Origin: Hyaloraphidium curvatum SAG 235-1
Lineage: Eukaryota; Fungi; Monoblepharomycota
Reading direction: 5' to 3'
NCBI GenBank assembly: GCA_025558095.1
Contig: JAIVFI010000023.1
Location: forward strand, 496,001-560,000
DNA: 64,000 nt
The notes below the pieces were generated by a model. It saw only the letters and a program-made list of their open reading frames with translations, was not told the origin of the DNA and did not search any database. Positions 45,130-56,000 of this stretch are shown piece by piece. Position 1 is the first letter of the stretch; each line of letters opens with the position of its first letter. Made by a program: the position numbers and the translations under genes.

Positions 45130-45820
45130 ATGTCAGCTGAGTCCGTTACTGCTCCTGCTCCGACCGTCGGTGCCGCGGAAGCACCGGGCGCCGGCAAGCC
45201 GCGGACCATCGTGCTCGCCCTCGACGGCAGCGCACACTCTACGTGAGCAGGGATCCCGCCCGCTCCGCGCCGGAAACAGCCTGACGTCCGCTCCCCGCCT
45301 CCGAAAACATCGTCACCGTGCTTCTGCGTGTGCCCTCTGCGCGGCAGCTACGCCCTGCACTGGGTCCTCGAGAACCTCCTCCGCCCCGGAGACAGGCTCG
45401 TCCTCTTCAGCGCCTACGAGGCCGTCTTCCGCGGCCACCGCGGCTCCGACGGCGGCTTCGCCGACGACCTCGAGCGCGAGCACAAGGCCGAGGCGATGAA
45501 GATGCTCGAGGGGATCAAGGCCGAGCTGCACGCCCAGGGGATCGAGGCCGCGGTCGTCGCGCACATGGGCGACCCGCGCGAGGCCATCCTCAGGACGTGC
45601 GAGGAGGCGAAAGCCGACCATCTCGTTGTGGGATCCAAGGGGAAGGGGGCAATCAAGAGGTGCGTCGTTCCGCTGCCGCTGCCCGCGATTCGCTCCTCTG
45701 ATCCTCCCCGCCAGGGCCCTGATGGGGAGCGTCTCGACGTTCGTGGTCACCCACGCGCACTGCGCGGTCACGGTCGTGCGCACTCCCGAGGGCTGGAATC
45801 CCCCTGTCAAGGCACATTAG
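45130..45820 (+). CDS. Universal stress protein (USP), 2 introns
   Basis: IVLALDGSAHS|YALHWV, GDPREAI, LVVGSKGKGAIKR|ALMGSVSTFVVTHAHCAVTVV. Confidence 0.93.
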
Positions 45821-45901
45821 TGGAATCGACCAAAGGTCTCGGGCGGAAGCTAATATCTTTGTCTCTAATGATCCAGCAAATCGAAAACACTTGCTGCCAA
45901 T

Positions 45902-47308
45902 TTAAAGCCACGCTCCAGGTTTGCACGGCGGCGGCCTGCTGCACGGTGTGCCGAAGTCCTTGGGCAGCTTGTGCGCCGGTCCGTCCTTCTCCGCCACGCA
46001 CGCCACCTTGTGCTTGGCCCAGTCCTTGGTTTGGCACTCCTTGCTGCAGTACCGCGCCACCATGCACCAGGAGCAGCGCAGGAACTTGACCTTCGTGAAG
46101 GGCGAACCCGGTTTCTTCACGGCCACAGCACTGCATCTGTTGTCGCACAAGTCGAAGTAGTCAAACATGTCCAATTCGTTAGCCGAGACGTCCGCAAACT
46201 CGGCGTCGCCCTCCTGCGAGCCAAAAGCTTCCGGTTCCAGGCCAGCGAGGTCGAGCAGATAGCGCGCCGACTGATCCCTGTAGTTGCACAGCTTGTCCCG
46301 CGAGCGCAGCGCCAACACGGCGGAGGGCGGACGGTCGTTTCGCAGCTTGGCGGCCGAGCGGAGCTCCCGGACGTAGTCCTCGAAAGGCACCGCGAGACCC
46401 TGGCTCTGCTGCACCTTGAGGTGCTCCACCCAGTGCTTCGGCCTTGGGCGGATGACGTCGTCCAGGATCTTTGCAACCCTCGTGAAAGTGCTCAGAGCCT
46501 GCAAAACTTCCTCCGGCATCCGATTGGAGAGATCCTCCTGGGAGCGAACTCGCATCCAGTCAGGCGAGAGGGCAGCGAACAGTGCGATGGCATCAAGCAG
46601 CTCGGGATCCTCCGAGAGGCGGCGCCGCACGCCTCCGCTCATGGTCATCAATGCCAGTATTGCCACGGCGTCCGCGGCGGTCATCCCGAACAAGGCCCCG
46701 TAGACTTCGGTCGCCCACCGTCGCGAGTGTGCATCCGGATGGTCGACGCCGGGGAGCACCGCGCCCTACGCCTCCCTCCTTCCCCGGTCCACAAACACCA
46801 TGATGACCCTGCGCAAGACCGGGCCGGCATCCCGGAACAGGTTGTGGACGACAATGTTCTGTATCTCCTCGGGCACATCGACCTTCTCCTCGGCGGGTGC
46901 CTGAGTCCCGGGCGGCAGGAACCGCTTGAGCAGCCCCCAGTTCCCCCAGTCTTTCCCGTGCAGCACGACGTGGAGGGCCGCGAGCACGTCGCCGAGACAT
47001 CTCTTGGTGACGTGCACATCGTGCTGCGGGACGGCCTCGTAAGGGTGCAGGTGGCCTCCGGATGTGCCGTGCCGCGCCATGACGGCTCCCCCCGGCGCCA
47101 GTGCGGCCGGCGGCGTGCGGGTTCCGTCCAGGAACGCGTAGTATGCCGGCGCGAACTTGCGGCAGGCGTGCGCCGCCAGCGAGTTGGCGAACTTGCCGGC
47201 ATCGAAGGTCCTCCAGAAGTCCGGGCGGCCTTCGTATCCCGGCCCGTACCTCCGCGGCTGCGATTCGGGGCCACTGGATCCCGATGAGCCCGCGACTTGG
47301 CCAGACAT
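45902..47308 (-). pseudogene. MYND zinc-finger protein interrupted by an in-frame TAG at 46766-46768
   Basis: ORFs 46766-47308 and 45902-46759 share one frame. C-terminal RCSWCMVARYCSKECQTKDWAKHKVAC. Confidence 0.7.
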
Positions 47309-47608
47309 TGCCCCTGGCGAGCGATCCCAAGCCGGAGCCGTGCTTGTTGTTTACCGAAGCGCGTCGAGCGGCCAATGAACCCGCCGCCGCTGCAGGCGCG
47401 CCCAGTTGCAAAGGACGTTGGAATCTGCCTCGGAAAAGGTGCTTTCTTGGCACCTGGAGGTTCTGTTTCGCCAGGAGCTGGCGGGTCGCGGGTCGGGCTT
47501 TGATGGACCTGTTCGAGGACCGACACGTCACCATCCGACTCCCCATCGACTCCCCACTCCACCAACTTCCACCGCTCCGCGCCCCTGCTTCCTTCCCTTC
47601 CCATCAAA

Positions 47609-48143
47609 ATGGCCCTGCAGGCGGAACACTACGCCAAGGCCGGCTCCTCCTCCTTCCCCGCCAAGATCTCCGACGTCCCGCACGCCGCGGCACTCGCCGA
47701 GATCCGCATCCTCAACGCCTGCATCGCCGCGTGCACCGCCTGCGCCGATAGGGCCGTCGAGGTGCCCTTTTCTTGTCCTCGCGGTTTTCCGCGCCGGGGG
47801 GAGGGACGAGCTGACCCACCCTCGAACGGCAATGCAGGAAGGAATGAACTGCTGGCGCGACTGCCGCCGCTGCACCGCCGCGTGCCGCGCCATGGCCGAG
47901 TTCGTCAGTCTCAACGCGCCGCAGCAGGTCGCGATGGCCAGGATCGTCGCCGAGTGCTGCGAGGCGTGCGCCGAGGTTTGCGGGGAGGTGGGTGGCTTCT
48001 CCCCCTCCCGGCCCCGGGAACGGTGCTGATGGACCGCCGGACGCCTGGAAAAGCACGCCAAGCACGGGTCGGAGCACTGCAGGGATTGCGCCGAGGCGTG
48101 CAGGAAGTGCGTGGAGGTGTTTGGAGGCAGGAGCATGGTCTGA
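47609..48143 (+). CDS. Four-helix-bundle copper-binding protein (Csp/DUF326-like), copy 1; 130 aa, 15 Cys
   Basis: Exons 47609-47761, 47838-47987, 48054-48143. Motifs CIAACTAC, CWRDCRRCTAAC, CCEACAEVC, HCRDCAEACRKC. Confidence 0.85.
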
Positions 48144-48315
48144 AGCGGGGTCGCGGACTGGAGAAGATGGAGGCGTCTTTGGATTCCAGGGGCCAGGAGA
48201 CGATCGGGGCGGTTGGACAATTGCAATAGCTTGTCGATCAATGCATTTCAATCTGATTCTTCAAAAGAAAAGGCCTGCCCACGGACCCACCGAAAACTAC
48301 CTCATCGTCGTGTGT

Positions 48316-49137
48316 TCATCTCTTTTTGGAGCCGCATACGGCCTTGTGGCGCTTCCAGTCGTTCCTCTGGCACGCCGCGTCGCAGTACCTTGCGCTGGGC
48401 TTGCATGTGCCCGCGCATTTCAGCAGCGCCAGGTCCTTTTTGCCGCACGCGTCGCACGTTTCGCGCTCCACGGGCTTCGGGGCGCCCGACCCGTCGGCAG
48501 CCGTCGGGTAGATCGTCGCGTACTTGCTCTCCCCCGGGCGCTCGACGGTTATCGGCTTCCCGGGCGGTGGTTGCTCCTCCCTGAACACGACCGCAACCCC
48601 CATGTCGGCCATGCTCCCGAGGTTGTCCCGCGCCAGCGCCAGGTACTCCGCCGCATGGCTCCCCAGCGCGACTCCCGTCTCGGCGGCCACAGTCCCGAAC
48701 CGCACGGCTTCCCTGTATTGCGCGGCCGCGTCGTCCCTCTTTTGCGCCACGTAGTACGCCCGGGCCAGGGTGCAGGCGGCGAGGATCCCCGCCTCGGGGT
48801 CCGAAGTCCTCCTCGCCGCCCGCAGCGCGGCCTTGACGGCGTCGTGCGCTGCAGGCGCGGTCCCAAGCGTGATCTCCTCGTGCGAGAAGGCGCTCCCGAG
48901 CGCGTGCAGCGAGTCGAGGTACATCGCCCGCATGGTCAGCGAGCCGTGGGACGACCCGAGGCCGGCGTCGGCGATGGTCATCTCCGACTGCGTGAGGCCC
49001 TTGGCGACGAAGGCGTCGACGGCCTTGGCGTACGCCTCGGCCGCGCCGCGCGGGTCGCGGTCCAGGATGTAATTCTGCCCGGCGAGCGAGAAGTGCCGCA
49101 GCGCGTCGCGCGCGGCCTGCTTCTGCGCGGCCGTCAT
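48316..49137 (-). CDS. Helical (TPR-like) protein with C-terminal MYND finger, intronless
   Basis: CDACGK...LLKCAGTCK...RYCDAACQRNDWKRHKAVC. Confidence 0.85.
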   Translation of the reverse strand: MTAAQKQAARDALRHFSLAGQNYILDRDPRGAAEAYAKAVDAFVAKGLTQSEMTIADAGLGSSHGSLTMRAMYLDSLHALGSAFSHEEITLGTAPAAHDAVKAALRAARRTSDPEAGILAACTLARAYYVAQKRDDAAAQYREAVRFGTVAAETGVALGSHAAEYLALARDNLGSMADMGVAVVFREEQPPPGKPITVERPGESKYATIYPTAADGSGAPKPVERETCDACGKKDLALLKCAGTCKPSARYCDAACQRNDWKRHKAVCGSKKR

Positions 49138-49288
49138 GAGCGCGGCGGCAAAGGCAAGGGCGGGAACGAGGCGTGGCCTGAAACCGGGGTTGGTTGCGAG
49201 TTTGCGGTTGGGGCGGAGTTGGCGAGTCGCGACCGCGTTTCGCGTTCACCAGTTCCCGGGAAAGGTCACTTCTCGCCGCGGCAGAACG

Positions 49289-49981
49289 ATGGCCAAATCG
49301 AAACGCGCGAAGGCCGCACCCTCGCGGCGCGTCGGCCAGCCGCGGGCCCCGAAAGACGGGGATGCGACGCTCGTCCCGCTCCCCCCGGAGCTGCTCCTCG
49401 CGGTCATGGAGATCCTGGAAGGCCAGGGACACAAGCGCACTTTGCTGGAGTTCCTTTGGGCGTTCAAGGATATGCTCGCGCTCGGGATGGGCCTGCTTGT
49501 CCGGAGCCTCCACCTGCTTGTCGCGACGCTGAGCGAGCTCGACCCCGACCGCCTCCTCGACAAGTTCCGCGGCCTCCTTTCCGTCGAGCTGACACCTTGG
49601 AAGCTTTCGCGCGTCGAGAAGCTCTCCGTGGCGATCTGGGAGCTGGACCCTTTCCACGCGGAGCTCCTGCGGGAGATTGCGCCGCCGCTGAAGGTCCTCG
49701 AGATCCGGGCGACGAGCCGTCCCGGGGTCGAGCGCTTCCTGGATTCCATAGGCACTGCGCCTGGCCGAAGCCTGGCAAGACGAAGAGGAATTCTGAATGG
49801 AGACCGAGGGCGTCGGCATGGTCCCGTTTGGACGGTGGGACATCTCTTTGGACGAGCTGCGGGAGGAGAAGGAGGAGAACGAGGGGGGGTGAGGGGGGAA
49901 GAAGGGGGGAGGGGAGAGGAGGGATCCGCAGATGTAGGGGCTGCGGAGTCCCATTCCTTTTCTGTCAATGTTGAGTTTTGA
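49289..49981 (+). pseudogene. F-box-like protein, apparently truncated or internally deleted
   Basis: LVPLPPELLLAVMEIL at the N-terminus. Coding-like sequence after ~49770 moves to another frame that contains a TGA. Confidence 0.5.
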
Positions 49982-50093
49982 GGCGATCTGAGGTTGCTGC
50001 AGGTCCTCGAACGGGCAGGGCGGGTCCGCGAGATTGCGTGCATGACGCTTCCTCCCAGGCCGCCACCCGCTGTCACCCAACAAACAGAGCGCA

Positions 50094-52140
50094 ATGGGGG
50101 ACGCCGCGGAGGCGCCCAAGCTGGCCACGCTGCCGCACGATGCGCTGTTCCTGATCTCCGCGTTCCTGCCGCCGCCGGACCTGCTCGTGCTGGGCGCGGC
50201 GGGCCGCGTGCTGCGGCAGCGGGTCGGCGCCGACGCGCAGCTGTGGCGGTCGGCGCTGCGGCGGCACTTCCAGCTCGACGCCGCGTTCCGCTCCCTCGAT
50301 TCACTGCTGCCGGGCGGCGAGACGCGGCGGCCATTTTCCGCGACGGCGGGCGACAACTGGTTCCGCTGCCTGTATCTGAAGGTGCTCGCCCGCGCAGGCC
50401 GCTGCCTCGGCTGGTGGATCAGCGACCGCCCGTTCCTCGGCGAGCTGCTGCGCGTGTCGCTGCTGGTGGGCCCCGGCGAGGGCGGCGAGCCGAGCGTGCG
50501 CATCGCCTACAGGCGGGCGCTGGTCGAGAACCTCGCCGCTCCCACCTTCGTCACCTGCGGATCGGTCGTCGTGGGCGCAGACGGCCTGCCGCTGTTTTCC
50601 ACTGGGGGCACGTCAAACCAGGCGCCCATCGGCGTGGCCGGCACATGGACCGCGCTGGTGCCCGTGACCGTCAACGTGCTCAAGGAGCGGCTGTCGTACG
50701 CCGAGATCTTTTCGCTCGTCGTGCCCGACGGCCTGCTGCCAAGGTGGAAAACCGATCCTGCGGTTGCTGATCGTGAGCACGAGACGGCGACATCGGCTGC
50801 GGACGGCAAGGGCAAGACCGTCGTCCGCGCCTCCCCGCCAGACGACGACCCAGCCCTCAAGCCCTTCATGATCTGCCGCGGCACCGCGGCCGCCCGCATG
50901 GCCCGCGCTCCCTCCGTCGCCGACGACGGCGGCGACGACCTCGCCGGGCGCCTCAAGGCCCTGTCGCTGGCCTCGGCAGGCCTGCTCGACCGCGACGAGG
51001 TGCTCCTCAGCCACGGGCCGGACCACCTCGCCGAGCTGCGGTGGTACAAGGAGCTGCACGACAGCGGACGGCCCGGAAGCGGGCGCCTCCCCGGTGCGCG
51101 AGACCGCTCCTTCTGCCCGCACATCTTCTAACCTCGGCGTCGGCCTTCCAGCGACCGACCTCTACAACCCCTCCTTCATCCTGTCCCCCTCCCATTTCGC
51201 CGTGGACTGCCCCCGTTCGTGCCACTCGTACATATCCCACCACCAGGCCTCCGCCGCGGCCGTGCACGGGGTCCGCCCCGGCGACGTCGGCCTCATGTTC
51301 GACCCCTCCTCGCTCCCCATGCACCGGCAGCAGCAGCACCAAGGAGGGGAAGGCGAACTGCTGGAAGACCTGGAGTACGACAGCGGGGAGGAGGAAGGCG
51401 GGGCCGGCGGGGAGAGCCGGGCGGCGCAGCAGGCGGCGGGGCAGCACGTGCCCCATGCGCCGCTGAGCACCGCGAGGGGGCCGGTGTTCCCGGCGAGGTA
51501 CTTCCGGCTGAGGGTGGAGAGGCCGATGTGGCACGGGGCAGGGGAGATGCCGGCACCGGGGGAGATGGGGTGGGAGCCGGAGCTGCTGCAGGGCCTCTGG
51601 GTATCCACCTACAGGTTCTTTTGCCCGCGCTGCCGTTCTTTCCCCGCTGACCGTTCCTCCCCTCGATTGCAGAACCCGCCCCCCCGCCTTCCTCTCCGTC
51701 GTCATCCACCGTTCCCCGTACCCCCACCCCCCGGAGCTCCGCGCCTACAAGCTCACCGGCAACCCCAACGTCCCCCGCGGCGCGCTCTCCTTCACCGCAT
51801 CCATGGACCCCCTGCCCCCGGGCGCCGGCAGCCCCGTGGCGGACGAGGACGAGGAGCTGCCGGACCAGGTGGTGTACCAGCACCTTCCGCCGCCGGGGGT
51901 GAGGGAGAGGGTGAGGATAAGGGGGGTGAGGGCGCGGTTCCCGGCGAGGAAGCAGTTCGCCACGCCCGCGGTACGTTGCCCTCGCAGCCGCGGGGCATGC
52001 GGTGCTGACGTTCGGTGCAGTACCGAAACAGCTACTTCAGCCCGTCGGAGCTGCTGGTCGTGGGCAACGACGAGTTCGTGGTGTTCAGCTACAAGCACGC
52101 GCACATCACTCGGTACAGGAAGATGCCCGCGGACCCTTGA
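50094..52140 (+). CDS. F-box protein, FBXO31/DUF3506-like, ~3 introns
   Basis: LATLPHDALFLISAFLPPPDL (F-box), LGWWISDRPFLGELL, LQGLWVSTY, AYKLTGNPNVPRG. Confidence 0.78.
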
Positions 52141-52280
52141 GACGGGGGCGGGCCTTTTCACTTTGCATTTGGAGTTGGATTGATAGATTCGTTGCTCGGC
52201 AAGATGCTGATGCTGCTAGGCCCGCCCGAACGTCGCATAGGCCACGGGCAATCCCAAGACGCCCCTCGTCTCCCACCGCC

Positions 52281-52809
52281 TCAGACCATGCTCCGGCCCC
52301 CGAAAACCTCCACGCACTTCCTGCACGCCTCGGCGCAATCCCTGCAGTGCTCCGACCCGTGCTTGGCGTGCTGTTTCGCCCGTTCGGTCCGTGAGCACCG
52401 TTCATCTCCGAGTGGAGAAAGCCACCCACCTCCTCGCACACCTCGGCGCACGACTCGCAGCACTCCGCCACGATCTTTGCCATCGCGACCTTCTGCGGGG
52501 CGTTGAGCGAGACGAACTCGGCCATGGCGCGGCACGCGGCGGCGCAGCGGCGGCAGTCGCGCCAACAGTTCATGCCCTCCTGCCGTGCGGGCGGGATCAG
52601 CCTCCGGCTTCCGGACACCATGCGGGAGGGAGAAGGCAGGGTACCTCGACGGCCCTGTCGGCGCACGCAATGCATGCCGCGACGCACTCCTGGAGGATCC
52701 TGATTTCGGCGAGCGCGGCGGCGTGCGGGACGTCGGATATCTTGGCGGGGAAGGCGGAGGCGGGGGCGGCGGCGGGCGCGTGGCCCGCGTGGCCCGCGTG
52801 CGAGGACAT
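52281..52809 (-). CDS. Four-helix-bundle copper-binding protein (Csp/DUF326-like), copy 2; ~134 aa, 15 Cys
   Basis: Same two intron positions and near-identical exons to 47609-48143; N-terminus MSSHAGHAGHA. Confidence 0.85.
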
Positions 52810-53063
52810 GTCGGCGGAGAAAAGGCGGGCAATGGGGCGCGGCGCAGGGGTTGCGGGGTTGGGGAGCGATTTGGGCACGTGCGGCCGCCCCGCCCCGCCC
52901 GGAACATCTTCGGGAGATCCTGGGTGCACCCGGGTCGGCCGCCTCTCCAAATCTTTGAAGCGCGTCCTTCAGACAGAGCTTCGTTCGACAGAGATCGGCA
53001 TCGCGCCGCTACAATACATTAACTTAGCCCCTGGCGCCCCGGGGCCGGGTATCGACCACCGCC

Positions 53064-56000
53064 TCACTTCCCCCCCGCCGCCTCCGCCGCCTCCCCGGCC
53101 TGCCCGTGCACCTCCGCCCCCTTCTGCGCAGCCAGCGCCTCCCACCCCTCCGGTATCCTCCTGCACGCCCTGATGGCCGCCGCCAGCGCGTTCATGTCGA
53201 TCGGCTTGGAGATGTAGGCGTCCATCCCCGCCTGGAGGCACGCCTCGCGCTCGTTCAGCAGCGCGTTGGCGGTCAGCGCGATGATGGTCGGCTGCCGCGC
53301 CTTGGGGATCTCGTCGCGGATGCGCTTGGTGGCCTCGAAGCCGTCGAGGATCGCTGGCATGGGAGGAATGAGGTCGGGCAGGGCATGTACCTGCGGCGAG
53401 CTGGTACTCACGCATCTGCACGTCCATGAGCACGCAGTCGTACACCTTGTCCGTGATGGCGTTGACACCCTCCAGGCCGTTGTTGGCCACGTCGGCCGAG
53501 AACCCGGCGCGCTTGAGCATCCGCAGCGCGATCTGCTGGTTGATCAAATTGTCCTCCACCAGCAGGATCCGCAGGCCCACGTCGGCCTGCCAGTCCGTCG
53601 AGGGGGTGCGGCTGACGTCGGCGGCGGGCTGAGGGGCGGCGAGCTTGTCGGGGGATGCGTGGTTGGAGCGCGGAGGGAAAGGGGCGGGCTGGGAAGCCGA
53701 GACGGCCTCCCAGGTCTGGTTGGAGCGGGTAGAGGTGGGGCCCGTGCGCACGCCGCGGGCGGTGTCCCAGGCTGCCAGCGCGGCGATCGACGCGGGGTTC
53801 ACGGTGCCGTTCATTGGGGCTGGGCGTGAAACGGGACCGGTCAGCGGCGAACTGGTCCCAAACGGCCGAGGAAGCCTACCGCTCGGCTGCCGCTTCTGCT
53901 TCCTCCCCGCGCTGTCCCTGCTCTGCCTCGCCGGCTCCACCACAAGCACGTCCACCAGCACGTCGAACATCCTGCTCGCGCGCACTGGCTTGGTCAGGAT
54001 CCGCGTAAAGTTGGCCTTGCGCGGGTCGTGCATGTCCAGGTCCTTGCCCAGCGAGGTGAGCATGATGAGCGGGATCCCGGGGTCGATCTTGCGGATCTCG
54101 TCCGAGAGCTCCAGCCCGTCCTGGTCCGGCATCGCCATGTCCAGGATGCACACGTCGAACCGCTTGTTGCTGTGCGCCAGCAGGTCCAGCGCTTCGAGCG
54201 CGTTCGAGACCGCGACCGTGTCCGTCTTCCATCCCAGCAGCTGCAGCGTGAGCACCCTCCTGTTCGTCGACACGTCGTCGACGCAGAGGATCCGCTTGCC
54301 CGACAGCAGCGTGTTCTCCTCCATGTGCTTTGGCCGCGAGATCTCGCTCTCGAGGGCACCCGGTGCGTCGAGCGTGAAGTGGAACGTAGACCCCACCCCG
54401 ACCTTGCTCTCGACCCATATCCGCCCGTTCATCTTCTCCACCAGCCGCTTGGATATGGCCAGGCCCAGGCCGGTGCCCCCGTACCGCCGCGTCGTGGAGG
54501 CGTCCACCTGCGAGAAGCTCTTGAACAGCCTGTCGATCCGCTCGGCGGGGATGCCGATGCCCGTGTCGCGCACGTAGAAGTGCAGCGCGTAGTTCCGCCG
54601 CCGGAGCGGCTGGTCCGACACGGCGAGCGAGGCGGGGCCGTCCTCGGGCTTCTTGGCAAAGTCCGCGAGCACGGGCACCTTCGACATGGTCGCGCTCGCG
54701 CGCTGCAGCCCGGGCCGCTTGGGGGCGCCGTCGGCCGCCGCCGGGGGCGAGGAAGACACCCCGCTCCGGGGGATCGTGAGCGCCTTGGGCGGCGGCGCCC
54801 GCTCCTTGGGCACTGCGACGACGCCAGACTGCAGGGTCTGCGTGGCGGTGTCGCTCCGCCGCCGCTCCAGCTTGGCCGGCCGGTCCAAGGAGTCCTTGTC
54901 GTCAGTCATGCTGATGAGCTCCACGCCCACGACCACCTCCCCGGCCGGGGTGAACTTGACGGCTGGCAAACACTCATCAGCAAACGCAAAGTTGATCCGT
55001 GACAGTCGCCCACCATTGTTCATCAAATTCAGCAGGATCTGCCTCAGCCTCCCCACATCCCCCACGATCCCCAGCGGCAGGTTGGGCTCGAACACGCACA
55101 TGACCTCGATCCGCTTCTCGGCAGCCTTGGCCGAGACCAGGTCCAGCGCCTCCTCAACGCACTCGCGGAGGTTGAAGGGGGCCATTTCGAGCTCCAGGTG
55201 GCCGGATTCGAGCTTGCTGAAGTCTGAGGGGGGTGCGGGGATCAGCCGATGTGGGAGCGGTCCGAGGGGTAGGCCCACCGAGGATCTCGTCAATGATCCG
55301 CAGCAGCGCGTTGCCAGAGTTCTTGATTACGCTGGCAAACTCGCGCTGGTTCGAATTCAGATCCGTTTCCAGAAGAAGATCAGTCTGTGGGTTGGGTGGA
55401 TCAATCAAAGGAGCTTCTTTCCCGGCGACACCATCCCTTCCCAACCCACCATCCCAATGACGCCGTTCATCGGCGTCCTGATCTCGTGCGACACTGGAGA
55501 CAAAAGGGTCAGGCCGTTCCCCAAGGCCGCCAAGCCCCACCCACTGGTCGCCAGGAACGCCGACTTTGCCTGGTTCGCCAGCTCCGCGCTAGCCTTGGCG
55601 CGAATCAGGTCCCGTTCAAACTTCTTCATCGGCGTCACGTCCCGCAGCACCAGCAGGCTGCCGCGGGACTTGCTCTCGTACAAGTCGATCGTCCGCTGCG
55701 AGCGGTGCGGCACAACCAGCTCCATGGGGCCGTTGCCGGTGCCGCTCGGGCCGGGGACGACCAGCTCGGGGCGCAAGGACCGCCGCCGGAGCTCGTTCCC
55801 CGCCGCGTCGCGCGCCTTGGCCTGCTCGACCATGCTCGCGAACGAGGAGCTGATGTGCGTCACGGCGGGGTCCCCGGCCTGCGCCGCACTGCGCTTGTCC
55901 CCCGCGATGAAGAAGTCGTCCTCGTCGTCGTCCGGGCCCGAGAGCGACGGCGACGTCTCCTGCGCCAGCAGCGTCGTCACCGAGACCAGGTAGATCCTGG

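What the first reader, a model, noticed from the sequence alone, without database searches (positions are those of the whole stretch)
47609..52809. Intron-containing eukaryotic homologues of bacterial copper storage proteins, as a pair
SEEN: no single ORF shows them. Splicing two introns gives 130 and ~134 aa proteins, each with 15 Cys in CxxxC/CxxC spacing on four predicted helices, H-x2-H-x3-HC before helix 4, and no signal peptide. Copy 2 begins HAGHAGHA. KNOWN: Csp/DUF326 (YhjQ-type) proteins are four-helix bundles with a Cys-lined core that stores Cu(I); they are mainly prokaryotic, and fungi typically use metallothioneins. INFERENCE: a domesticated cytosolic Csp3-like copper store. Exons are near-identical while introns have diverged, which suggests purifying selection on both copies.
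Basis: partly seen in the sequence, partly recalled or inferred. Interest (0 to 1): 0.8.

Follow-up and report, generated by a model that had tools for sequence, protein, structure and literature searches.

The report
Fungal pair of copper-storage-like genes
A water fungus (Hyaloraphidium curvatum) carries two intron-containing genes for small cysteine-lined four-helix proteins of the copper storage (Csp) family, so far described only in bacteria, and they belong to an old eukaryotic branch of that family shared with other early fungi and an amoeba.

Summary
Two convergent three-exon genes (47609-48143 +, 52809-52281 -) encode 130 and 134 aa proteins with 15 Cys each. Copy 2 is missing from the protein collections searched, but contigs of an RNA-type run skip both its introns at the predicted bases. 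Copy 1's splices are not shown in that run.

Csp membership is well supported:
- phmmer to S. lividans Csp3 gives E 4e-6.
- The AlphaFold2 model has pLDDT 89, and about the first 40 Foldseek PDB matches are almost all Csp1/Csp3.
- A homotetramer model scores 0.94 against 0.00 for the best control.

The copies differ with dN/dS 0.14, and every Cys and His in the shared part is kept.

New here: the nearest relatives are eukaryotic (Spizellomyces, Paraphysoderma, Diversispora, Phalansterium and metagenomic eukaryotes). They sit on one side of a tree branch with 94/98 support. The phase-0 intron before the conserved loop His is shared by four fungal lineages. This is therefore an old eukaryotic Csp branch, not contamination or recent transfer.

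Cu(I) binding is inferred, not tested. The scan had already noted this same stretch (s1-714599).

The parts
47609..47761 (+). Copy 1 exon 1 (51 codons): disordered N-terminal tail plus helix 1 with C38, C42, C45
   Evidence: Translation; identical to residues 1-51 of P0001; sub-threshold PF03860 hit
47762..47837 (+). Copy 1 intron 1 (76 nt, GT..AG, phase 0, CTGAC branch-site-like motif)
   Evidence: Sequence; removing it reproduces P0001. Retained in the only RNA-type contig covering it. Same position in L003, L004 and the P0027/P0002 contig
47838..47987 (+). Copy 1 exon 2 (50 codons): helix 1-2 loop, helix 2 and most of helix 3; 8 Cys
47988..48053 (+). Copy 1 intron 2 (66 nt, GT..AG, phase 0), directly before the conserved His102
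   Evidence: Position shared with Spizellomyces, Paraphysoderma, Diversispora and L004
48054..48143 (+). Copy 1 exon 3 (29 codons plus stop): His motif H-x2-H-x3-HC and helix 4 with 4 Cys
   Evidence: PF03860 22.9 bits, above the 20.4 cut-off
52645..52809 (-). Copy 2 exon 1 (55 codons): His-rich start MSS-HAGHAGHA, tail and helix 1
   Evidence: covered by RNA-type contig record 5
52580..52644 (-). Copy 2 intron 1 (65 nt, GT..AG on the minus strand)
   Evidence: Skipped in an RNA-type contig: joint 52578/52644, cut +1, CT..AC
52430..52579 (-). Copy 2 exon 2 (50 codons, 45/50 aa identical to copy 1)
52371..52429 (-). Copy 2 intron 2 (59 nt)
   Evidence: Skipped exactly in an RNA-type contig: joint 52370/52430, CT..AC
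52281..52370 (-). Copy 2 exon 3 (29 codons plus stop; protein identical to copy 1 exon 3)
48144..52280 (.). Unrelated 4.1-kb block between the convergent copies: MYND-finger gene (48316-49137, -), an unnamed + gene from about 49291, and a spliced F-box-like gene (50094-52140, +)
   Evidence: Pfam hits; F-box gene introns skipped in RNA-type contigs; no similarity between the flanks of the two copies

Best explanation
The two genes are paralogues from an old inverted duplication (dS about 0.4). They encode cytosolic members of the Csp (copper storage protein, PF03860) family. Each monomer is a four-helix bundle. Fifteen cysteine thiols line the upper two thirds of its core, and three histidines in the helix 3-4 loop (H102, H105, H109) sit at the open 'mouth', as in classical bacterial Csp3s. 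By analogy the protein would assemble as a tetramer and fill its core with Cu(I) through the mouth. From the Cys count (Csp1 has 13 Cys and classical Csp3s 16-19), the capacity is probably in the low to mid teens per monomer. This would buffer or store cytosolic copper for detoxification or for later supply to copper enzymes. Shown here: gene structure, family membership by sequence and predicted fold, selection, expression and splicing of copy 2, and the eukaryotic clade with a shared intron. Inferred: tetramer, Cu(I) binding, capacity and physiological role.
For: Gene models. Homology: phmmer against PDB sequences finds only Csp proteins at the top (6q6b S. lividans Csp3 E 4.4e-6, BsCsp3, MtCsp1). 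TIGR04401 scores 44 bits, E 2.5e-11. PF03860 on exon 3 scores 22.9 bits, above the 20.4 cut-off. ESM Atlas: all 30 hits are PF03860 clusters. Fold: AF2 pLDDT 89.4, four helices. Foldseek PDB matches down to about rank 40 are almost all Csp1/Csp3/Ccsp or structural-genomics relatives, TM 0.75-0.91 by target and rmsd 1.3-3 A. Cys lie on one face of each helix (resultant 0.79-0.93). C56, C99, C110 and C113 are invariant, and C45, C95, C117, H102 and H109 are kept in at least 90% of 49 homologues. Homotetramer model: ipSAE 0.94 in three runs against 0.00 for the best of 3 controls; partner pLDDT at least 89; contacts agree at least 93%. That mark was reached by 21 of 30 proteins solved as pairs of one chain and by 0 of 23 solved as single chains. 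Selection: dN 0.054, dS 0.394, ratio 0.14, Fisher p 1.5e-8. Native to the host: GC3 0.92-0.94 in a 67.7% GC window, spliceosomal introns, and RNA-type contigs splicing copy 2. Family properties come from PMC10155185: Csps are tetramers, all Cys point into the core without disulfides, three His in the alpha3-loop-alpha4 region define classical Csp3s, and about 18 Cu(I) bind per monomer with 16-19 Cys.
Against: No metal-binding data exist for any eukaryotic member. The whole-protein PF03860 score of P0001 in the local Pfam copy is 18.9 bits, just below the 20.4 cut-off. The TIGR04401 score is far below its 100-bit subfamily cut-off. Helix 1 lacks three Cys present in S. lividans Csp3 (alignment), so the Cu core would be shorter. 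The tetramer pass may reflect memory of solved Csp tetramers. Copy 1 is not shown to be expressed or spliced in the one RNA-type run available. No known fungal copper-responsive promoter motif was found upstream of either copy.
Confidence: 0.7

Rival explanations
1. Same fold and family, but the physiological ligand is not copper. The protein would be a general soft-metal (Zn, Cd, Ag) or thiol-redox buffer, acting like a structured metallothionein.
For: The evidence here is sequence and predicted fold only. A DUF326 protein was reported among cadmium-binding proteins of Enterobacter cloacae (PMC6727835; listed, title and abstract only, paper not read). Only one physiological role is known for any Csp3.
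Against: All biochemically characterised Csps bind Cu(I) with about 1e17 M-1 affinity. The classical His motif at the mouth is retained.
Confidence: 0.15
2. The Cys-rich helices form structural disulfides in an oxidising compartment (mitochondrial intermembrane space or secretory pathway), and the protein is not a metal store.
For: CxxxC motifs also occur in IMS proteins imported by Mia40 (general knowledge). Localisation was not tested.
Against: There is no signal peptide or presequence-like N-terminus. Cys point into the bundle core, as in Csps, which do not form disulfides. Homology is to the whole Csp bundle, including the His motif.
Confidence: 0.05
3. The genes are bacterial contamination, or a recent bacterial transfer specific to Hyaloraphidium.
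For: The family is overwhelmingly bacterial in the databases.
Against: Two spliceosomal introns per gene, with copy 2 spliced in RNA-type contigs. Host-like GC3. Eukaryotic neighbours on a 699-kb contig. The nearest relatives are eukaryotic and lie on one side of a branch supported 94/98, or SH-aLRT 98 without the long-branch row. The phase-0 intron before the loop His is shared with Spizellomyces, Paraphysoderma and Diversispora.
Confidence: 0.03

Closest known systems
Streptomyces lividans cytosolic copper storage protein (SlCsp3/Ccsp; PDB 6EI0, 6EK9, 6Q6B)
   Same: Best sequence match among solved structures (E 4.4e-6 over residues 15-122). Four-helix bundle (TM 0.73-0.77 by target). No signal peptide. 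The N-terminal extension has a similar aromatic-Pro start (FPAK against YPAD). His motif in the helix 3-4 loop. All four helix-4 Cys are conserved.
   Different: 15 Cys instead of 18: three helix-1 Cys are absent and one is added on helix 2. The helix 1-2 loop is 5 residues shorter. By my count of the alignment (chain numbering assumed 3 below the native), the position of the non-Cys ligand Asp61 is Cys60 here. The His spacing is H-x2-H-x3-H instead of H-x3-H-x-H. The genes are eukaryotic and carry introns.
Bacillus subtilis Csp3 (YhjQ; PDB 5FIG, 6WKT) and Methylosinus trichosporium Csp3 (5ARM/5ARN)
   Same: Cytosolic Cys-lined four-helix bundle with the 'classical' three-His mouth motif. Predicted homotetramer.
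   Different: Only 27-30% identity over the structural alignment. Fewer Cys (15 against 18-19). BsCsp3's known role, supplying Cu to the spore-coat oxidase CotA, has no evident counterpart here.
Methylosinus trichosporium Csp1 (PDB 5FJD/5FJE; TIGR04401 subfamily)
   Same: Top Foldseek matches (TM 0.80-0.91 by target). Similar Cys number (13 in Csp1, general knowledge).
   Different: Csp1 is exported through a Tat signal peptide; these proteins have none. The TIGR04401 score of 44 bits is far below the 100-bit cut-off.
Uncharacterised eukaryotic homologues: Spizellomyces punctatus SPPG_09489 (UniRef name 'Four-helix bundle copper-binding protein'), Paraphysoderma sedebokerense BKA69DRAFT_840025, Diversispora eburnea CAG8436693, Phalansterium solitarium transcript
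   Same: Same clade in the tree. Short helix 1-2 loop with the E-x-G-x-x-C-W/Y motif. The three genomic fungal homologues share the phase-0 intron before the loop His.
   Different: 27-37% identity. The other fungi have a phase-1 intron in helix 2 instead of Hyaloraphidium's intron 1. Some members have fewer Cys (about 10-13). Only Hyaloraphidium is shown here to have two copies. None has been studied experimentally, as far as the paper library shows.
Fungal copper metallothioneins (e.g. yeast Cup1/Crs5)
   Same: Likely the same cellular job: thiolate-based cytosolic Cu(I) sequestration in a fungus.
   Different: Metallothioneins are unstructured without metal and fold around Cu clusters. Csps are preformed helical bundles filled through a mouth. 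There is no sequence or fold relationship.

Membership tests
Csp family (Pfam PF03860, Csp/DUF326) | Significant sequence match to the family | tested here: met
   Exon 3 of each copy scores 22.9 bits against a 20.4 cut-off. Two loci in the genome are over the cut-off. P0001 carries a precomputed PF03860.22 hit. PDB phmmer gives E 4.4e-6 to SlCsp3. Caveat: whole-protein P0001 scores 18.9 bits in the local Pfam copy, just under the cut-off; the model is a 21-position repeat.
Csp family (Pfam PF03860, Csp/DUF326) | Four-helix bundle monomer | tested here: met
   AF2 model with pLDDT 89.4, helices 25-51, 57-75, 81-103 and 108-129. Foldseek matches down to about rank 40 are almost all Csp-type structures. 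This is a predicted structure, not a solved one.
Csp family (Pfam PF03860, Csp/DUF326) | Many Cys at i+3/i+4 spacing, all facing the bundle core | tested here: met
   15 Cys lie on one face of each helix. 10 Cys/His columns are conserved across 49 homologues. The orientation into the core is inferred from helical periodicity and homology; I could not read the model's coordinates.
Classical Csp3 subgroup | Cytosolic: no Tat or Sec signal peptide | tested here: met
   The N-terminus is polar and predicted disordered, with no twin-Arg motif and no hydrophobic stretch. No dedicated signal-peptide predictor was available.
Classical Csp3 subgroup | Three-His motif in the alpha3-loop-alpha4 region at the mouth (PMC10155185) | tested here: met
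   H102, H105 and H109 are present in both copies. H102 and H109 are kept in at least 90% of homologues. The spacing differs from SlCsp3.
Classical Csp3 subgroup | Homotetramer | tested here: inconclusive
   Four-copy model: ipSAE 0.94 against 0.00 for the best control, pLDDT at least 89, contacts agree at least 93%. The mark was reached by 21/30 proteins solved as pairs of one chain and 0/23 solved as single chains. The pass may come from memory of solved Csp tetramers, and a model is not a measurement.
Classical Csp3 subgroup | Binds many Cu(I) ions per monomer with about 1e17 M-1 affinity | not testable with these tools
   Requires protein chemistry.
Csp1 subfamily (NCBIfam TIGR04401) | Score above the subfamily cut-off, and a Tat signal | tested here: not met
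   44 bits against a 100-bit cut-off; no signal peptide.

The most novel reading that the evidence does not exclude
Csp-type copper stores are an ancient, vertically inherited eukaryotic system. They survive in zoosporic and other early-diverging fungi (Monoblepharidomycetes, Chytridiomycota, Blastocladiomycota, Glomeromycotina) and in at least one amoebozoan, and were replaced by metallothioneins in Dikarya. In Hyaloraphidium the two paralogues would have split roles: copy 2, with its His-rich tail, expressed under standard conditions, and copy 1 silent until induced, for example by copper.
Probability: 0.3. Interest if true: 0.7.

Novelty: new member of a known kind. Interest (0 to 1): 0.55.

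Why it matters
The papers I read on copper storage proteins present Csps as a bacterial invention and metallothioneins as the eukaryotic answer to cytosolic copper. I found no paper in the held library that describes a eukaryotic Csp. Here is an intron-bearing eukaryotic branch of the family under purifying selection, with one of the two copies shown to be expressed and spliced. One intron position is shared across four fungal lineages. This gives a concrete, testable case that some eukaryotes use preformed Cys-lined bundles instead of, or beside, metallothioneins. It also gives a marker for tracing when that system was lost in fungal evolution. In addition, copy 2 (52281-52809, minus strand) appears to be missing from public protein sets despite RNA support.

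Tried and rejected
- **Copy 2 not joined.** Copy 2 was searched exon by exon by reference. Whole-protein work used P0001, the database protein identical to copy 1's three exons.
- **Word-index searches.** Searches with exon 2 and with P0001 found almost nothing, so the exhaustive search was needed. A word-index profile search with the eukaryotic alignment added no named eukaryotes.
- **Locus look-up.** The look-up of encoding contigs for P0001 returned nothing because the window's own genome is withheld.
- **More copies in the genome.** None was found by the family model, the protein or the profile.
- **Conserved Csp-MYND synteny.** L004 also has a MYND gene near its Csp gene, but the similarity is confined to the zinc finger. 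I treat this as coincidence.
- **Copper-responsive promoter elements.** Mac1 CuRE and the Ace1 site are absent upstream of both copies. The animal MRE is absent upstream of copy 1 and gives only single consensus matches upstream of copy 2. The two promoters share only a 10-mer (GAAGCGCGTC), roughly as chance allows (the chance estimate is mine).
- **Long-branch row P0074.** It fell next to the eukaryotic group in the first tree, but it lies in a bacterial context (TatC) on a branch of length 5. Leaving it out gives a clean split.
- **Literature.** Searches for eukaryotic, fungal or chytrid Csp gave no relevant paper. The JBC 2018 Csp review is not held.
Full report
**What is there**

The window is G000:C23:496001-560000 of a 31.9-Mb, 55-contig genome. 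The name attached to the database protein encoded here identifies it as Hyaloraphidium curvatum, a monoblepharid fungus.

Two small genes lie on opposite strands and point towards each other.

| | Strand | Exon 1 | Exon 2 | Exon 3 (with stop) | Introns | Protein |
|---|---|---|---|---|---|---|
| Copy 1 | + | 47609-47761 | 47838-47987 | 48054-48143 | 76 and 66 nt | 51+50+29 = 130 aa |
| Copy 2 | - | 52809-52645 | 52579-52430 | 52370-52281 | 65 and 59 nt | 55+50+29 = 134 aa |

All four introns are GT..AG and phase 0. Copy 1's three exon translations placed end to end are identical to P0001, [quoted passage not shown].

Copy 2 was examined exon by exon by reference. All whole-protein analyses used P0001.

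Each protein has 15 Cys (3+8+4). The motif H102-x2-H105-x3-H109-C110 precedes the last helix, and copy 2 starts MSS-HAGHAGHA.

**The duplication**

- Only the coding body is duplicated: 47646-48148 against 52760-52276, 81.8% identity. The flanks are unrelated.
- Exon DNA identities are 82, 89 and 96%. Intron 2 is 89% alike apart from indels, and intron 1 only 57%. 'Near-identical exons, diverged introns' is therefore only partly true.
- The codon-level test is clear. Nei-Gojobori counts summed over the three exon alignments give dS 0.39, dN 0.054 and a ratio of 0.14 (Fisher p 1.5e-8). Every Cys and every His of the shared part is retained.
- GC3 is 0.92-0.94 in a 67.7% GC window, so the genes look native to the host.
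- No further copy exists in the genome.
- About 4.1 kb of unrelated genes lies between the copies: a MYND-finger gene, an unnamed gene and a spliced F-box-like gene.

**RNA evidence**

One public run holds the stretch. It is recorded only as 'RNA?'. Its Logan contigs skip GT..AG introns and leave part of an intergenic stretch uncovered, so it behaves as RNA.

- **Copy 2.** Both introns are skipped at exactly the predicted bases: 52371-52429 and 52580-52644, with CT..AC ends on the plus strand.
- **Copy 1.** The picture is different.
  - The only contig covering it is a 3.9-kb contig that also spans the upstream genes. It runs 47300-47904 with intron 1 retained.
  - It ends at a 32-nt stretch shared with copy 2. 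That length is my reading of the sequences.
  - Positions 47905-48242 are not covered at all.
- **Limits.** Contigs cannot give strand or local depth, so this does not disprove the copy 1 model. I have no RNA support for copy 1's splices, and copy 1 seems little expressed in that sample.
- **Copy 2 in protein collections.** Copy 2's protein did not appear in either word-index search, although it shares long exact words with the query. It seems to be missing from the public protein sets searched.

**What it is**

- **Sequence.**
  - phmmer of P0001 against all PDB chain sequences puts copper storage proteins at the top: S. lividans cytosolic Csp (6q6b) at E 4.4e-6 over residues 15-122, then BsCsp3, MtCsp1 and RkCsp3.
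  - NCBIfam TIGR04401 (Csp1 family) gives E 2.5e-11 but only 44 bits against a 100-bit subfamily cut-off.
  - The short PF03860 repeat model scores 22.9 bits on exon 3 alone (cut-off 20.4) and 18.9 bits on the whole protein.
- **Fold.**
  - An AlphaFold2 model built on 49 homologues has mean pLDDT 89.4 (core about 98). Its four helices are 25-51, 57-75, 81-103 and 108-129.
  - Foldseek against the PDB returns almost only Csp1, Csp3, Ccsp or their structural-genomics relatives down to about rank 40. TM by target is 0.75-0.91 and rmsd 1.3-3 A.
- **Cysteines and histidines.**
  - The Cys lie on one face of each helix (resultant 0.79-0.93).
  - They occupy the half to two thirds of the bundle nearest the helix 1-2 and 3-4 loops.
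  - That is the end where the three His sit, as at the 'mouth' of classical Csp3s (PMC10155185).
- **Differences from S. lividans Csp3** (alignment).
  - Three Cys on helix 1 are missing.
  - The position of its non-Cys ligand Asp61 is Cys60 here. This assumes the PDB chain is numbered 3 below the native protein.
  - The helix 1-2 loop is five residues shorter.
- **Oligomer.**
  - A four-copy model passes the tool's test: ipSAE 0.94 in three runs against 0.00 for the best of 3 controls. Partner pLDDT is at least 89, and the runs agree in at least 93% of contacts.
  - The mark was reached by 21 of 30 proteins solved as pairs of one chain and by 0 of 23 solved as single chains.
  - Because Csp tetramers are solved, the pass may be from memory. 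It shows likeness, not binding.

**Relatives and origin**

The exhaustive search found only 78 proteins at E up to 1e-3, and the closest are eukaryotic.

- **Named homologues.** These are Phalansterium solitarium (Amoebozoa, transcript), Paraphysoderma sedebokerense (Blastocladiomycota), Spizellomyces punctatus and S. 'palustris' (Chytridiomycota), and Diversispora eburnea (Glomeromycotina). For the S. punctatus protein, UniRef already gives the automatic name 'Four-helix bundle copper-binding protein'.
- **Metagenomic homologues.** Three lie among plainly eukaryotic genes such as gelsolin, PDS5, WD40, mS41 and muHD.
- **Exon fragments.** Several short 'proteins' in the hit list are single exons of still closer relatives, read into the intron by prokaryotic gene callers.
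  - L003 has intron 1 at the same codon boundary and no intron 2.
  - L004 has both introns at the same places and a His-rich start, QHAGHGH.
  - A 991-bp JGI contig has both introns as well.
- **Tree.**
  - In a maximum-likelihood tree of 65 full-length hits, every sequence of eukaryotic provenance lies on one side of a branch supported 94/98.
  - On the same side are two sequences of unknown origin from about 1-kb contigs and one very long-branched bacterial row.
  - Leaving that row out (bacterial context) gives a split of exactly those 10 sequences from 54 bacterial-type ones, with SH-aLRT 98.
- **Intron map** (NCBI gene models mapped onto their DNA).
  - The phase-0 intron immediately before the conserved loop His (Hyaloraphidium intron 2) falls in the same alignment column in Hyaloraphidium, Spizellomyces, Paraphysoderma and Diversispora.
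  - A phase-1 intron in helix 2 is shared by the latter three and absent from Hyaloraphidium.
  - Hyaloraphidium's intron 1 is shared only with its closest relatives.

Shared intron positions across four fungal lineages make contamination or a recent, lineage-specific bacterial transfer very unlikely. The gene was probably present, with that intron, in an early fungal ancestor. A 100-residue protein and an unrooted tree cannot tell whether the eukaryotic branch goes back to one ancient transfer or further.

**Mechanism, and what is inferred**

By homology, each monomer is a preformed bundle whose reduced thiols bind Cu(I) in clusters. The ions would enter through the His-lined mouth, and monomers would pack as a tetramer. 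The role would be to buffer or store cytosolic copper.

- **Capacity.** It is probably lower than the roughly 18 Cu(I) of 16-19-Cys Csp3s, given 15 Cys and a hydrophobic lower third. This is my inference.
- **His-rich tails.** His-rich N-terminal tails recur in copy 2, L004 and P0012. This fits a metal-handling role but proves nothing.
- **Not tested.** Metal specificity, oligomeric state, localisation and regulation are all untested. No known fungal copper-response element was found upstream of either copy.

**Novelty**

The family and fold are known, and databases already tag some eukaryotic members automatically. I found no paper describing a eukaryotic Csp. The Csp papers I read treat the family as bacterial and metallothioneins as the eukaryotic counterpart. 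I therefore file this as a new member (a eukaryotic branch) of a known kind. The added value is the intron-based evidence for its age in fungi and an apparently unannotated, expressed second copy.

An earlier first-stage note of this scan, s1-714599, describes the same convergent pair.

Noticed in passing
window 47300-48242: The only RNA-type contig over copy 1 is a 3.9-kb contig that also spans the upstream genes. It retains copy 1's intron 1 and stops at 47904, at a 32-nt stretch shared with copy 2. Positions 47905-48242 have no contig at all. Possible readings are an antisense or read-through transcript, or a silent copy 1; the strand cannot be told from contigs.
   Followed up: partly
window 50094-52370: The F-box-like gene (+) has three introns skipped in RNA-type contigs (about 51093-51150, 51612-51669 and 51970-52019). 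Its stop (52140) is only 140 nt from copy 2's stop (52281) on the other strand. One contig runs across both genes, so their 3' ends probably overlap or abut.
   Followed up: partly
window 46766-47308 (-), 48316-49137 (-); L004 10075-11616: A MYND-finger gene lies just downstream of copy 1. A MYND gene also lies 3.7 kb from the Csp homologue on L004. Similarity between the MYND genes is limited to the zinc finger, so this is probably chance in a genome rich in MYND genes.
   Followed up: yes
window 52781-52800 (-); L004 6194-6211; P0012: His-rich N-terminal tails (HAGHAGH, HAGHGH, HEHHGKG) recur in copy 2 and in two close homologues but not in copy 1. They may be a metal-capturing tail.
   Followed up: no
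window 45328-46086 (+): An open frame with a universal stress protein (Usp) domain (E 4.6e-13) lies upstream. It is included in the same high-depth RNA-type contig as copy 1's first exon.
   Followed up: no
window 52969-55293 (-): A long open frame with histidine-kinase and response-regulator-like sequence ends about 160 nt upstream of copy 2's start codon, on the same strand. An RNA-type contig runs across the gap.
   Followed up: no
window 47355-47368 and 52953-52968: The two otherwise unrelated promoters share the 10-mer GAAGCGCGTC, in opposite orientation relative to the genes. My estimate is that this is about what chance allows.
   Followed up: partly
L007 6001-6558: A 185-aa bacterial Csp-like protein (P0074; TatC and GMP synthase nearby) sits on an extremely long branch. 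It was drawn next to the eukaryotic group until it was left out of the tree.
   Followed up: partly
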